Source of the DNA: Mizuhopecten yessoensis
Lineage: Eukaryota
Direction: 5' to 3'
Assembly (NCBI RefSeq): GCF_002113885.1
Contig: NW_018406970.1
Span: 1,734,022-1,798,021, forward strand
Length of the DNA stretch: 64,000 nt
Both the position numbers and the translations under genes were made by a program. The notes below the pieces were generated by a model. The model saw nothing but the letters and a program-made list of their open reading frames with translations, did not search any database and was not told the DNA's origin. The stretch's first letter is position 1; each line of letters begins with the position of its first letter. Below, piece after piece: positions 5,901-44,547 of the stretch.

Positions 5901-7225
5901 GTAGATTATGGAAGCAATGATACAGACATATACTGACAATATCGCATGCTTTTGGCCTTTTCTGTGATACTGAACTGAAGGGTTTTAATTATTAATTTTT
6001 AATTAACTTCTCACTCTCGACTGTTCTGTTTTTACCAGAGTAAACGAGCTGTGTGTCATTGCCTGCAGGACAGTCCTTCCTTCCCCATCTGGTGTACACC
6101 ACGCCTTTACACCCTGTAGCACGCAAGCAGACAGAAAGTTTACATAATAAAGTGAGTGAAGACAATTCCGGAACTAAATGAAATTAACTGTCTTTTTAAC
6201 AACCTGCACGTGCTTTCTCTAAATAATTGTGTGTTTTTGTTCATGTAAGTATCCACAAATCATTATACATGCACATATACCCTATATAAGTGCTTAATGC
6301 TCAACATCCAATTTACTAGGTATTTGTACCAACACCGAAATAACTAGGTACATTTTAGGAATAGTGACCGTAAACGGAGTTATGTGCAATTTTGGAAAAT
6401 GCATAAATCGATTTTGGAATATACAGAAATAATTAAACACCTTGTAAGATCTGATTGTGAGCCATTGGTAGTTTTAGAGAGAGACAGACAGACAGAGAGA
6501 TGTTGCTCGGTGAACGTTTTTGAAAGCACAGCAGTGGAACATTTGACATTAATAACTCATGAATGTTATGTTGTATTCTTAACTCTGAACGGATTTTAGA
6601 TTTGAACTTTATAAGAATTAATTTTGAATCGTTCAAGAAGTATTGATAATGCAATGTTATTGTTCATTCTCGATACAAATTATGTTGTTCTGTGTCTATG
6701 ATATATACTACGATGAAGAACTGTCAAGTTTAAACCAATGAAGTATACTTGGAATAAAAGTGGAATTGTGTAAGAGTCGGATACCAAATGCACTTTGTTC
6801 CTGTTGGGTTACACAATGTACTTACTTTCCTGTGCCATTTTCATGATAACGGATTGTTGATTGGTGACGGTCTGTTGTAGGGTGGAAATCGTCTGCTGTT
6901 GACTGGACATTGCCTGCTGTTGACTGGACATTGCCTGCTGTTGACTGGACATTGCCTGCTGTTGATCGCTTATGTTTTGTTGCTGATTAGTGACGGTCTG
7001 TTGGAGGGTAGATACGGTCTGTTGGAGGGTAGATACGGTCTGTTGGAAAGTGGACACGGTCTGTTCTTGGTTTCCAGCCTTGACTCGTAGCTCCTGTAGC
7101 TCCGACTGGAGATGGGTGAGTTGCTGGGACACATACGCGGGGTCATTCAGCAAAATACGTTTTTCGGAGGCGAGAGTTAAGACGAAAAGGCACACAATTC
7201 CAGCAATGACTGTTTGGCCCGCCAT
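2903..7225 (-). CDS. Paralogue A1: secreted coiled-coil + short-chain collagen C4-like (spongin NC1-like) domain protein, 317 aa, 3 exons
   Basis: Exons 7225-6826 (400 nt), 6113-6036 (78 nt), 3378-2903 (476 nt); all introns GT-AG, phase 1; joined frame open (954 nt). Hydrophobic N-terminus MAGQTVIAGIVCLFVLTLA, QQTVSTL heptads, motifs VYTRWGRKDCP, GGAANTLCMP, YGAEY, CAVC, CYPGWT, CGSLPCPPY. Confidence 0.9.
3570..5900. repeat. ~45-46-bp minisatellite in intron 2 of A1
   Basis: Unit GGTTCATGCACATCGCTAAACAAGGTACATACCTATTGGGGGAAAA, about 50 copies. Confidence 0.95.
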
Positions 7226-7919
7226 AATGTCAGTAGCGGTATGAGAGTAAACACCACGCTACGATCTGTTATCAACGAAGGAAAAAAGCAGGTGCTGTTC
7301 TCTTATCAATTAGCCCTAAACAAGGCTACTGACATCGCTTTTGGAGTATACAGAAATAATAAAACACCATACATGATCTGATCTTGATCCATCGTACGCC
7401 TCAAGTAGAAGCTTGATTAAATTCCGGTGGATACATATTGAGACAAGTCAATGGGTGATGACGTTTGATGGGGCAGTTCTATTATAAATGGTTACAATCT
7501 CGGTACACAATGTTCACACCTTGGAACTTGTTATTTATTGGGGGATTTAAAAAGTGAACTTTTGATTCACCTTACAATTGCTGGTGCAATTTACCAATTC
7601 ATGACCATTTTATTACGGATCTTTCATGAACAGAATGGAGGTAAGACAACATCATAAATATGTCTCAACGTCTGTTATAGCCAAATGAACGTAATATAAG
7701 GCTGCGTGTAACGTTTAAAATGAAATAAAAATGAAATAAAGAAAAACACTTTATTTCTGAAATTAATGTAAATCTCGATCGATCGAAGGATCAACCACCG
7801 ACCACGTGATCTTTATGTTGACCAAAATATGAATGATGTAAACCATATACCAACAGTAATGGCAATATAATTTATAAACTAGATATTTATTTTTTTGACC
7901 AAAAACATATGTCTCCTCT

Positions 7920-8190
7920 AGGAGTGGGACGACTTGTTCGCCCGTTGTCAGTATAATGTGACCGGGTGGGGTGTCCGGCTGTGTGTCTTCGGCAGTATGT
8001 TTCAGTGAGGTAGCACTATAAAGTCGGCATCGGGTCTGCGTTATCACAAGGACACAAACACGAACATATCGCAGCCTTCCAAAACACACACGCATACACT
8101 ACACGCATGCATCTTGCAAACAGGGGAGGCCGTCCTTAAATGACCATAGCTGTTGATAGGACGTTAAACAATACTAAACCAAACAAAACC
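7920..8190 (+). mobile_element. 5'-truncated Meta-domain-like SINE (duplicated at ~21411-21682)
   Basis: GTCAGTATAATGTGACCGGGTGGGG...TTCAGTGAGGTAGCACTATAAAG body; tail CGTCCTTAAATGACCATAGCTGTTGATAGGACGTTAAAC followed by AAAC-rich repeats. Confidence 0.6.
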
Positions 8191-41355: not shown

Positions 41356-41888
41356 TTGTGATTGGAATGAGAGAAAAGGCCTCTTTTGTGCCCATGGGTG
41401 TATAATAGGGAAATCCCAACCTCCGAACTTTCAAACTGGTGGTGCAAAACCCTCGGCAAGCATCGGGTTATACACAATTTGAAAAACCTTGAGTGGAATT
41501 TCCCCATCCTACACCCCTAGGCATGAAAGAGGCTTATAATCTATCCAGATATTACCGGTACGTACCAGAGTAGACAAGTTGGTAACCGTTTCCCTCGGGA
41601 CAGTCCTTTCTGCCCCACCTAGTGTAAACAACTCCTTGTCCACCTGAAATCAATAACAACATAAAACATTAACTCCACAGATGTCAGTTAAAGCAAGCTG
41701 TATCATTGAAACTATTTGATAAACAGTTTATATATGATGGTTGGGTTAATTCAAATGCACACTTTAAGCATATTATATTTTCAACTTCTGATTATTTAGC
41801 TAATGAACTTGATTGCAATAAGTTTGGGGGAGCTTGTAATTTCTCTACAAGAAAACATCAACCAAACTGTATTTACCATATCGCCGGA

Positions 41889-42120
41889 TTTGTTTGGTTC
41901 GGTTTGTTTGTGTTTTACGTTCTTTTAAACAGCTATGGTCGTTTAAGGACGTGCCAGGTTTTGATGGTGGAGGAATGCCGAAGCACCTGGAGAAAAACCA
42001 CCGATCTACAGCAAGTAGCTGGCGACTGCCCCACTGAGGCCGAGAACCCGCAACCCAGCGGTGGAGGGCTTGTGATTGTAGACGGTCAGACGCCTTAACC
42101 ACTCGACCTCCGCGGCCCCC
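41889..42120 (-). mobile_element. Full-length tRNA-derived V-domain-like SINE in intron 1 of gene C
   Basis: Head GGGGCCGCGGAGGTCGAGTGGTTAAGG; V-like GGTTTTTCTCCAGGTGCTTCGGCATTCCTCCACC; tail CGTCCTTAAACGACCATAGCTGTT followed by AAAC-rich repeats. Confidence 0.65.
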
Positions 42121-44547
42121 AGTACGGTTTTCACAGACGTGACGGGGCCAGACAAATGTATTTTGGCCATATTGTTTTTAAAGTCTTCACGACTTCTTCT
42201 ATGGAACTATGAAACCCCGCGCCATGGGCTGGTTTACAACATTCTCAGGTGGTGGTGAGTCAACGTTATACAAATGGAGGGGCCGACACCCCCTCGCAAG
42301 GGTTGAGAGGCAGGACCAAAAGTTGAGAAACCCAACATACAACCTTATATACAATTGCTCAGTTTAAAGATAAGAATACACATGAGCTACCAGGATTTAC
42401 CCCATGGTCCTGCCCAACCCCAGGGGACTTAGTTCATGGTTCATAACATAAAAATGTTTGGTATCACCATCCCATAACCATTTATACAATTGCTTGAACA
42501 CATCATGCTATTAGACTTTGCCCCGCCTGTTTGGACACTATGACCATATCTAAAATGCTGAACATGAAAGGACGAATACAGATATGCTACCAAGATTTGC
42601 CTTGGCGTCTGCCCCCTCCCCCTTCCCTTTCGAAACATTGCCCCATGGTCATAACATGGAAGAAGTTGTGATCTCCTGTAACAATTACTGAGCATGATGA
42701 GTTGGATACACATATATGCTTCCATTATTAGCTCTGTGGTCAGTCACCACCCCTAAGAACTTACTCTTTTTTATGAGAATATTTTCCAAGGTTATTTAAA
42801 TATCCAGGTGATCGCTACAGGCTCTATTGTATTGCAATCAAATAACTGCATTTTCAAATCATCTCCTAAATTAATAAATTGCCAGTTCACATATGCTACA
42901 ACACAATCATTTCGTCAGAAGTGGACCTCAACTCTCACACATATTTCACCTTGGCTAGTCAGTGTAGTGATGGTTGACTGTTGGCTGTCGATTTTCTGTT
43001 GTTGGGCCCCCACCTTAACCTGGAGCTCTTGTAGCTGTGACTGAATGCGGACCAGTTCCTGTGATACATACGTCGGATCGGTCATCAAAATCCGTCGGTC
43101 TTTGGCGGACGTCGGACAGCAGAGGTACACAACGAAAAATGCGATGAAATAGCGATACATTGTGGTAGAATCGGGCAGTAAGAATGAGTCTCAGAATAGA
43201 TAGGTAGGGTTTGTAAATAGGGCTCCTGTCGTCACAGATAAGGCGAGTCCGACAGAGATAACGAATACTTTTACTATATGACATATATTACGACCCATGC
43301 TCCTGAACACTTTTGAATTAATATTACATACATAACGTAATCATTAATCATTTACACGTTAAATAAAGGTAAGAAGCTGTGAAACTCTAATGAGGGAAAT
43401 CACAATCACAAACGCCACCCTACCCCTACCCTTCCCCCTCCCGCACCCCCTCCCCCCATTTTTTTTTTTAATAATATGAAACAAAAATCATAAAAATAAA
43501 ACACATAAATAAATTAAACTTATAAAAGAAAAAAAGAAAAGGAAAATCGATAAATAAACACCATATGTATTCGCAAATGATGCCATTCTCAGTCAGAGTT
43601 CAATCTACAGCGTCTGTCTTGCCAACATGTTTCGTTCACATCTAGATTGCAATTCAAAACATCCCTTCCTCCAACATTAACTATATAATAATAAAAACAA
43701 AATAAAATAAAAAGTCATAAATAAAAAACACTATATGCATTCGCAAATGATGCCATTTGAATTCGCCCTAGACAAAAATTTATCAGCTGATCAGAAGTCA
43801 TGACGGCCATCTTGAATCCCATATCAATGAAGCTGGCCCAAATAGTCCTCGATTTAGATTGTACATTTTGTAATTATCTTTGCCTCAGTTAGAGGCCAAT
43901 CTCTGCTGATAAAATGTTTCGCTCATCACATTTAGTTTACATTACAAAACATTCCTGCTCCGACATTAACAGTAGTCAAGATCATTTACATCATATTTAC
44001 TGAGTTAATCATCGGATAAAATCGAAACAGTTTAAAGTTTGTAATACAATTGTGACAGAAGGTCCCCGGGGGCATTTTTCATGAATCATTACCGCCATTT
44101 ACCTGTATTTTTTTGTGTGACTGTGGCCAAAATAAAGTGATATTAAGAGAAATCGACATAAAATCAGGTGATAATAAAAGAATTGAATTTCATAGATTAT
44201 ATAGCAGGAAAAACGGTGCATCAGATCAACATGATAATAACCGAAAAGTGACATTAACGGACGTGATATTAGGTGAAATGTAATGTAGTTGTTTTGTCCG
44301 GGAAGAGAGTCAAATATGAATACATAAAAAACATAAGAGACGAGTTATTTAAATTACGTTGAGACAGAATACAATTTAATTAAAATTATATCTTCACATC
44401 GCTCCCGTTTACTGATACGTCGCGTTGAAACGGGAGCGATGTGAAGATATAATTTTAATTTGATTGGACAGAATACTGCTTGAAAAGGTGTAACTAACGG
44501 GGAACACCAAAAATGCAAACCATGCACGTTACTTATTGTAGCAACAT

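What the first reader, a model, noticed from the sequence alone, without database searches (positions are those of the whole stretch)
6826..43160. Stalk length is quantised in exact 21-nt heptads across all six paralogues
Coding exon-1 lengths are 400, 379, 336 (337 before the 1-bp deletion), 316, 253 and 211 nt. All differ by multiples of 21, including the divergent gene C. A coding minisatellite (QQTVSTL, QQAMSSQ, QQNISSQ) acts as a modular ruler giving six stalk lengths over a nine-heptad range while preserving coiled-coil register.
Basis: seen in the sequence. Interest (0 to 1): 0.7.

Follow-up and report, generated by a model that had tools for sequence, protein, structure and literature searches.

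The report
Scallop coiled-coil stalk genes, heptad minisatellite
Six neighbouring scallop genes for secreted "lollipop" proteins differ in stalk length by exact 21-base steps, because the stalk is encoded by a one-heptad tandem repeat that gains and loses whole units. The pattern is real and tidy, but it is an expected result of repeat instability and has not been shown to work as a ruler.

Summary
On the minus strand lie six paralogues of the Mizuhopecten yessoensis "short-chain collagen C4-like" (spongin-like) family. Their exon 1 lengths are 400, 379, 336, 316, 253 and 211 nt. Each exon 1 is 168 shared nt, then 11, 10, 8, 7, 4 or 2 units of 21 nt, then 1 nt; the 336-nt copy has lost one base.

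AlphaFold predicts one long helix followed by a head with the collagen IV NC1 fold.

- Two of the six copies are dead in this assembly (C3 has several lesions; F has an in-frame TAA), so at most four stalk lengths are made.
- Each length difference is flanked by repeat homology, noncoding minisatellites at the same locus also vary between duplicates, and the 5' part of exon 1 has been gene-converted between two anciently diverged head types. Misaligned exchange in a period-21 array therefore explains the exact steps without selection.
- Selection probably fixes the period: independent stalk repeats elsewhere in the family have periods of 7, 14 or 21 residues.

A ruler function is untested. This is a new variant of known kinds and of modest interest.

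The parts
6826..7225 (-). Gene A (type I head) exon 1, 400 nt: signal peptide, four unique heptads, then 11 units of 21 nt (array 6827-7057)
   Evidence: identical to NCBI protein P0008 residues 1-133
2903..6113 (-). Gene A exon 2 (6036-6113) and exon 3 (2903-3378). Intron 2 holds a 45-nt minisatellite (3554-5847, about 50 copies)
   Evidence: the joined coding sequence gives 317 aa with no internal stop
13944..14322 (-). Gene B (type II head) exon 1, 379 nt, 10 units (array 13945-14154)
   Evidence: matches P0001
11478..13639 (-). Gene B exon 2 (13562-13639) and exon 3 (11478-11953)
   Evidence: 310 aa, intact
20436..20771 (-). Pseudogene C3 (type I) exon 1, 336 nt: 8 units with a 1-nt loss near nt 232 that gives a stop; last base T, donor GTAAAT
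15580..19861 (-). C3 remnants: exon 2 (about 19778-19861) has TAC>TAA and a 9-nt deletion; exon 3 (15580-16066) is split over three frames. A 45-nt minisatellite lies at 16325-19507
25015..25330 (-). Gene D (type II) exon 1, 316 nt, 7 units (array 25016-25162)
   Evidence: an RNA contig joint places the donor after 25015
22723..24731 (-). Gene D exon 2 (24654-24731) and exon 3 (22723-23198). Intron 2 carries a very high-copy repeat at about 23428-24246
   Evidence: 289 aa, matches P0002
29836..30088 (-). Gene E (type I) exon 1, 253 nt, 4 units (array 29837-29920). The P. maximus orthologue has the same length
26462..29120 (-). Gene E exon 2 (29043-29120) and exon 3 (26462-26937). A 45-nt minisatellite lies at 27155-28864 in intron 2
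   Evidence: 268 aa, matches P0004
42950..43160 (-).
   Evidence: the P. maximus orthologue is also 211 nt
39433..41643 (-). Gene F exon 2 (41566-41643) and exon 3 (39433-39908), with an in-frame TAA at 39751-39753 where relatives have Met
8831..11375 (.). 41-nt minisatellite downstream of type II gene B (about 64 copies). Its counterpart downstream of D is 22233-22643 (10 copies)

Best explanation
This is a tandem cluster of Yesso-scallop genes for secreted proteins. Each has a signal peptide, an uncharged Gln/Ser/Thr-rich alpha-helical coiled-coil stalk encoded wholly by exon 1, and a 183-residue, 10-cysteine head with the collagen IV NC1 / spongin fold encoded by exons 2 and 3. The coiled coil stands where spongins carry a short collagen triple helix.

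Inside exon 1 a 21-nt coding minisatellite (one heptad per unit) has gained and lost whole units. The likely routes are replication slippage, unequal exchange and gene conversion among the tandem paralogues. The starting point was a 4-unit (type I) or 2-unit (F) ancestor, and the present copies have 2 to 11 units.

Because misalignment in a period-21 array can only shift by multiples of 21 nt, all variants differ by whole heptads and keep an unbroken a/d register automatically. Selection most likely acts one level up, by allowing only heptad-multiple periods to become established in these stalks.

Shown: the lengths, the unit structure, the register, the splice sites, the head fold, the pseudogene status of C3 and F, and the gene conversion. 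Inferred: trimeric assembly, the exact mutational route, and any function of the length differences.
For: - Lengths and unit maps. Period-21 arrays, including perfect copies.
- Donors agree with NCBI models and with RNA contig joints in D.
- Register: a = V/I/M/L and d = L/F/Q, continuous from KRILLND to the exon end in A, B, D, E and F.
- AlphaFold2 model of P0001: a single helix at 30-126, and a head with pLDDT above 90.
- Head matches collagen IV NC1: Foldseek E = 1e-4, all top hits; VIA Z = 8.1 over 152 residues spanning the whole NC1.
- Ten conserved Cys, which fits the spongin count of 7 + 3 given in PMC5395295.
- Homologues with real Gly-X-Y stalks abut the same YxRWG junction (P0113 with PF01391, P0086, P0096).
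- Signatures of misaligned exchange: C3's MSTLQQT unit is a hybrid of A's MSS and ISTLQQT units; E equals C3 minus four units lying between two VTNQQ units; B equals D plus a three-unit block.
- Noncoding 45-nt and 41-nt arrays of the same duplicates also differ in copy number: about 50, 70 and 38 copies, and 64 versus 10.
- Gene conversion: head synonymous difference between types I and II is saturated (pS 0.75-0.78), yet the first 168 nt of exon 1 show dS of only 0.10-0.23 and the 120 nt upstream are also shared. The last 42 nt of exon 1 are type-specific at about 70% identity.
- Recent expansion: P. maximus has only the F orthologue (211 nt) and one type I orthologue (253 nt) at the syntenic locus. 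No other database protein shares this stalk.
- Constraint on the period: independent internal stalk repeats in the family have periods of 7, 14 and 21 aa only.
Against: - No direct evidence for slippage or unequal exchange. No copy-number polymorphism was seen, but only gene D was examined, in two other individuals, and from contigs.
- Coiled-coil formation and oligomer state are predicted only. About half of the d positions in the expanded units are Gln, so the added segments may be weakly associating.
- Between F, type I and type II (dS saturated) no non-heptad indel exists in the stalk, although it is Gln-codon-rich. This hints at purifying selection beyond pure mechanism.
- Expression is shown only for D, from one probable RNA run. 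A second RNA run, of raw reads, had essentially no reads.
Confidence: 0.8

Rival explanations
1. Adaptive ruler. The different stalk lengths (about 8, 11, 14 and 15 nm of helix) are selected. Each paralogue would present its NC1-like head at a defined distance, for example as spacers in an extracellular lattice or as recognition molecules with graded reach. Non-heptad variants would be removed by selection.
For: - No non-heptad indel occurs in the stalk across anciently diverged lineages.
- Exon 1 lengths of F and E are conserved between Pecten and Mizuhopecten.
- Family-wide repeat periods are always heptad multiples.
- Four intact genes have four different lengths.
Against: - The longest-range claim rests on two dead copies.
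- Unit changes arose within only 2-4% neutral divergence, alongside equally variable noncoding arrays, as expected for drift of an unstable array.
- The phase between stalk and head is not conserved family-wide.
- No functional or expression data tie length to a role.
Confidence: 0.15
2. The repeat region is not a coiled coil. It would instead be a Gln/Ser/Thr-rich, possibly glycosylated, flexible or beta-structured spacer, and the 7-residue period would be incidental.
For: - The repeat part is about 30% Gln and 30% Ser+Thr, with almost no charge.
- Many d positions are Gln.
- There is a sub-threshold Pfam hit to a beta-roll antifreeze repeat (22.6 bits against a cut-off of 30).
- N-x-S/T sequons occur in N-type units.
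Against: - The a positions are V/I/M/L in every unit, in phase with the clearly amphipathic unique N-terminal heptads.
- AlphaFold gives one continuous helix, with pLDDT of about 70-90.
- There is no Pro or Gly in the repeats.
- Relatives have classical charged coiled coils or collagen at the same position.
Confidence: 0.08
3. Coincidence or annotation artefact. The exon boundaries would be mis-set, and the lengths would differ by 21 only by chance among in-frame variants.
For: None beyond the small sample of six genes.
Against: - Donors are supported by NCBI models, an RNA contig and orthologues.
- The unit-by-unit tandem structure is visible directly.
- The chance estimate is about 6e-5.
Confidence: 0.01

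Closest known systems
Spongin short-chain collagens / 'short-chain collagen C4-like' proteins (Exposito 1991; Aouacheria 2006; Fidler 2017, PMC5395295)
   Same: Homologous C-terminal NC1-like head: E down to 1e-25 to collagen-bearing members, 10 Cys, no HSQ motif, and the collagen IV NC1 fold. The proteins are secreted, and the family is widespread in non-ecdysozoan invertebrates.
   Different: There is no Gly-X-Y collagen domain. A heptad coiled coil encoded by exon 1 sits at the same junction. The Pfam C4 model does not detect the head.
Bivalve C1qDC 'type II' proteins (PMC6835236)
   Same: In bivalves the collagen tail of a trimeric globular-head protein is replaced by a coiled-coil tail. 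The genes are expanded by tandem duplication.
   Different: The head fold is unrelated (C1q/TNF jelly roll versus NC1). No heptad minisatellite length series was mentioned in the passages of that paper I read.
Coiled-coil surface proteins with variable heptad-multiple repeats, such as streptococcal M proteins and the YadA stalk (from general knowledge, not tested here)
   Same: Tandem repeats whose period is compatible with the coiled-coil register expand and contract by recombination. This changes fibre length without breaking the coil.
   Different: Those are bacterial and vary between strains. Here the variation is between tandem paralogues of an animal genome, and the stalk is uncharged and Gln-rich.
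Coding minisatellites / intragenic tandem repeats, such as yeast FLO adhesins (from general knowledge)
   Same: In-frame unit gain and loss generates quantised size variants of secreted or surface proteins.
   Different: The unit here is exactly one structural heptad of an alpha-helical rod rather than a disordered Ser/Thr-rich spacer.

Membership tests
Spongin short-chain collagen-related (NC1-like head) family | C-terminal domain homologous to spongin / 'short-chain collagen C4' NC1 | tested here: met
   134 hits named short-chain collagen C4(-like). These include collagen-bearing P0113 (PF01391, E = 3e-25), and P0086 and P0096 with Gly-X-Y directly before YIRWG.
Spongin short-chain collagen-related (NC1-like head) family | Collagen IV NC1 fold | tested here: met
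   Foldseek top 20 hits are all collagen IV NC1, E = 1e-4, prob 1.00. VIA Z = 7.2-8.1, 141-152 residues aligned, model 129-310 against chain 4-227. The Z value is moderate, but all top hits agree and cover the whole domain.
Spongin short-chain collagen-related (NC1-like head) family | Ten conserved cysteines (7 shared with collagen IV plus 3 spongin-specific) and no HSQ motif (PMC5395295) | tested here: met
   Ten invariant or near-invariant Cys in alignment A1. There are 10 Cys in the heads of B, D and E, and 11 in A; no HSQ. I did not map which seven correspond to collagen IV.
Spongin short-chain collagen-related (NC1-like head) family | Short collagenous Gly-X-Y domain before the NC1 | tested here: not met
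   There is no run of four or more Gly-X-Y triplets. Residues 30-126 are predicted as one helix. These are therefore spongin-head proteins, not collagens.
Collagen IV C4 domain (Pfam PF01413) | Match to the Pfam C4 model | tested here: not met
   No Pfam family at E <= 1 for the exon 3 products, and no PDB match by sequence.
Alpha-helical coiled coil | Continuous heptad pattern with apolar a/d positions in a long helix | tested here: met
   a single register fits the whole stalk in all five readable genes, and the a position is always V/I/M/L in the repeats; helix at 30-126. The d position is Gln in roughly half of the expanded units.
Alpha-helical coiled coil | Oligomerisation (expected to be a trimer) | not testable with these tools
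   Only single-chain prediction is available. A trimer is inferred from the collagen-bearing relatives and from NC1 trimers.
Coding minisatellite (VNTR) | Tandem array of 10-100-nt units, in frame, with copy number varying between copies | tested here: met
   TRF period 21. There are 11, 10, 8, 7, 4 and 2 units in the six paralogues.
Coding minisatellite (VNTR) | Copy-number polymorphism between individuals | tested here: inconclusive
   Only gene D was laid on reads. It shows no stalk indel in two DNA contig sets and one RNA contig set. Perfect repeats such as those in gene A cannot be resolved in k = 31 contigs.

The most novel reading that the evidence does not exclude
The scallop maintains a graded series of rigid stalks (about 8 to 15 nm) carrying two anciently diverged NC1-like heads. 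Gene conversion keeps the promoter-proximal region, signal peptide and first heptads identical across both head types. All members could then be co-expressed and nucleate assembly through one shared N-terminal module. Stalk length would set the spacing of heads in an extracellular lattice, or the reach of a recognition molecule. That would make it a genetically encoded, heptad-stepped ruler that evolves by minisatellite dynamics.
Probability: 0.12. Interest if true: 0.65.

Novelty: new variant of a known kind. Interest (0 to 1): 0.36.

Why it matters
If the lengths matter functionally, this cluster is a natural allelic series for asking how stalk length tunes an NC1-type head. It is also a clean example of a structural repeat (the heptad) coinciding with a mutational repeat (the minisatellite unit).

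Even on the ordinary reading, three points are worth recording. Molluscan 'short-chain collagen C4-like' proteins are often not collagens at all: they are spongin heads on coiled coils, parallel to the bivalve C1qDC type II architecture. The stalk exon evolves by rapid unit turnover. Exon 1 is exchanged by gene conversion between heads whose synonymous sites are saturated.

Tried and rejected
- Pfam and PDB sequence search on the head exons gave nothing. The fold search was needed.
- The sub-threshold beta-roll antifreeze Pfam hit on the stalk was rejected: it is below the cut-off, the repeats lack Gly, and the model is helical.
- A family-wide fixed phase between the N-terminal KRIL motif and the head was tested and rejected. 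The residues modulo 7 are spread over 0-6 outside this cluster.
- A search of the window's own genome found no further copies of this exon 1 outside the cluster.
- The raw-read RNA run X23 had almost no reads on gene D, so strand, level and tissue of expression remain unknown.
- NCBI lists gene E as 'isoform X1'. Its other isoform could not be retrieved, so an alternative donor in E is not excluded.
- The P. maximus model P0007 reads part of exon 2 out of frame. It was used only through its DNA.
- Literature searches for a coiled-coil spongin architecture and for the LOC identifiers found nothing specific. Aouacheria 2006 is not held.
Searches used single exons by reference or the NCBI proteins that the search returned. 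Exons were concatenated only inside local scripts, to count length and stops and to compute dN/dS.
- The N run at 60786-61716 was left untouched.
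Full report
**What is there**

The window is Mizuhopecten yessoensis. Exon-wise protein search returns 100%-identical NCBI proteins from a 2.1-Mb scaffold, named 'short-chain collagen C4-like' or uncharacterised. tblastn of family proteins finds exactly six genes in the window, all on the minus strand. Each has three exons:
- Exon 1 encodes the signal peptide and the stalk.
- Exon 2 is 78 nt and encodes GKGVVYTRWGRK.CP...LVY.G.
- Exon 3 is 476 nt and encodes the rest of a Cys-rich head.

Both introns are phase 1 with GT..AG ends.

**Check of the observation**

From the conserved ATG to the donor, exon 1 measures 400, 379, 336, 316, 253 and 211 nt. In 21-nt rows, all six share eight rows (168 nt). 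They then carry 11, 10, 8, 7, 4 and 2 rows of heptad units, followed by one last base. C3 lacks one base near nt 232 and so runs into a stop. TRF reports the period-21 arrays independently, including 3.5 perfect copies in A.

The donors are supported in three ways:
- An RNA-like contig set (X15) joins 25015 to 24731 and 24654 to 23198 in gene D.
- In Pecten maximus the syntenic F orthologue and the single type I orthologue have exon 1 lengths of 211 and 253 nt.

With only the reading frame as a constraint, the chance of this pattern is about 6e-5.

One refinement is needed. The quantised part is the mature stalk, not exon 1 as a whole. The Argopecten F orthologue has two more signal-peptide residues. 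A 3-nt deletion in signal-peptide codon 9 or thereabouts (25306) occurs in contigs of two other individuals.

**What the proteins are**

The stalk has a single uninterrupted heptad register from KRILLND to the end of exon 1. Position a is V/I/M/L, position d is L/F or Gln, positions e and f are Gln-Gln, and positions b, c and g are Ser/Thr/Asn. It has almost no charge, about 30% Gln and about 30% Ser+Thr.

AlphaFold2 on a 67-sequence alignment gives one helix (residues 30-126 in B) and a confident beta-rich head. The head's best PDB matches are all collagen IV NC1 domains: Foldseek E = 1e-4 and VIA Z up to 8.1 over about 150 residues covering the whole NC1. It has ten conserved cysteines and no HSQ motif, which fits the spongin count of 7 + 3 described in PMC5395295.

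Distant homologues keep a true Gly-X-Y stalk abutting the same YxRWG junction. These scallop proteins are therefore spongin-type heads on a coiled coil instead of a collagen helix. Bivalve C1qDC type II proteins show the same substitution (PMC6835236). Pfam's C4 model and PDB sequence search miss the head.

**How the length series arose**

There are two head types:
- Type I is A, C3 and E, with a 45-nt minisatellite in intron 2.
- Type II is B and D, with a 41-nt minisatellite downstream.

They alternate as E-D-C3-B-A, which indicates duplication of a two-gene unit. The divergence figures are as follows:

| Comparison | Region | Synonymous divergence |
|---|---|---|
| Within a type (A-E; B-D) | Head | dS 0.12; 0.07 |
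| Between types I and II | Head | pS 0.75-0.78, saturated (as against F) |
| Between types I and II | First 168 nt of exon 1 | dS 0.10-0.23 |

About 120 nt upstream of the ATG are also shared between the types. The last 42 nt of exon 1, intron 1 and exon 2 are type-specific. The 5' part of exon 1 has therefore been exchanged between old paralogues by gene conversion, with one boundary inside the repeat array.

Unit maps show the footprints of misaligned exchange:
- C3 has a hybrid MSS/ISTLQQT unit where A has three more units.
- E equals C3 minus four units lying between two VTNQQ units.
- B equals D plus a three-unit block.

Type I introns differ by only 2-4.5%, yet A, C3 and E differ by 3 to 7 units, so turnover is fast. 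The noncoding arrays of the same duplicates vary too: about 50, 70 and 38 copies for the 45-nt array, and 64 versus 10 for the 41-nt array.

P. maximus has only one 4-unit gene here, and no other database protein shares the stalk. The expansion to 7-11 units is therefore specific to the Mizuhopecten lineage.

**Mechanism versus selection**

Exact 21-nt steps follow from the period of the array and need no selection. Two observations nevertheless point to a structural filter:
- Independent internal stalk repeats elsewhere in the family have periods of 7, 14 and 21 residues only. I judge these to be four separate arrays.
- No non-heptad indel has accumulated in the stalk between F, type I and type II, despite saturated synonymous divergence.

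Against a strict ruler:
- The offset between the N-terminal motif and the head is spread over all residues modulo 7 in the wider family.
- One paralogue tolerates an 11-residue unit.
- Two of the six 'lengths' belong to dead genes. C3 has a frameshift in exon 1, a nonsense codon plus a 9-nt deletion in exon 2, and two frameshifts in exon 3. F has an in-frame TAA at 39751-39753, and no M. yessoensis protein corresponding to F appears among the hits.

**Verdict**

The pattern is real and nicely regular. The genes are a coiled-coil-stalked variant of the spongin family. The quantisation is best explained by minisatellite dynamics plus gene conversion, in an array whose unit equals one heptad. A functional ruler remains an untested possibility, with a probability of about 0.1-0.15.

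**Limits**
- Oligomer state, expression pattern and population polymorphism were not measurable here.
- The N stretch at 60786-61716 was not touched.

Noticed in passing
window 7037-7345, 14134-14442, 20583-20891, 25142-25450, 29900-30208 (minus strand): About 120 nt upstream of the ATG plus the first 168 nt of exon 1 are 94-98% identical in all five genes A to E, although the two head types are saturated at synonymous sites. This is a short gene-conversion or exon 1 exchange tract ending inside the repeat array. The first repeat unit (VSTF in A and D; VTTL in C3 and E) does not follow head type.
   Followed up: yes
window 3554-5847, 16325-19507, 27155-28864; and 8831-11375, 22233-22643: Large noncoding minisatellites are tied to gene type. 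A 45-nt unit lies in intron 2 of the type I genes, and a 41-nt unit lies downstream of the type II genes. Copy numbers differ strongly between duplicates.
   Followed up: partly
window 39751-39753 (minus strand): Gene F has an in-frame TAA where relatives have Met (FGM.DL). No M. yessoensis protein corresponding to F appeared among the hits. Whether the stop is fixed, polymorphic or an assembly error was not tested.
   Followed up: partly
window 6110-6113 region (gene A exon 2 start): Gene A alone has Arg-Cys instead of Ser-Gly at the junction of stalk and head. This gives an 11th cysteine that could form an interchain disulfide.
   Followed up: no
window 23428-24246: Part of intron 2 of gene D is a very high-copy repeat. 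Summed k-mer depth reaches about 24,000 in two DNA runs, against about 12 for the flanking sequence. It is presumably a transposable element.
   Followed up: no
window 33459-35495 (+): An intact 678-aa ORF with DDE_Tnp_4 (E = 2e-17), HTH_Tnp_4 and a weak SWIM finger. It is a Harbinger/PIF-like transposase lying between genes F and E, matching the earlier PHIS note on this window.
   Followed up: partly
window 1-1012 and 31262-31871: Two different satellites of about 145-157 nt each end in a (GGAC/ACGG)-type microsatellite. From memory this resembles the satellite-plus-microsatellite modules of bivalve Helentron ('pearl')-type elements. Only the microsatellite ends are similar to each other.
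   Followed up: partly
L009:14276-14360 (Pecten maximus): Exon 2 of the P. maximus type I orthologue matches in two overlapping frames. The NCBI model P0007 reads part of it out of frame (AWCTRDGEER instead of GVVYTRWGRK). This suggests a frameshift or an assembly error in that species.
   Followed up: partly
window 25306: A 3-nt deletion variant in the signal-peptide region appears at single-copy depth in contigs of two other individuals. Because the sequence is shared by five paralogues, the gene of origin is unknown.
   Followed up: no
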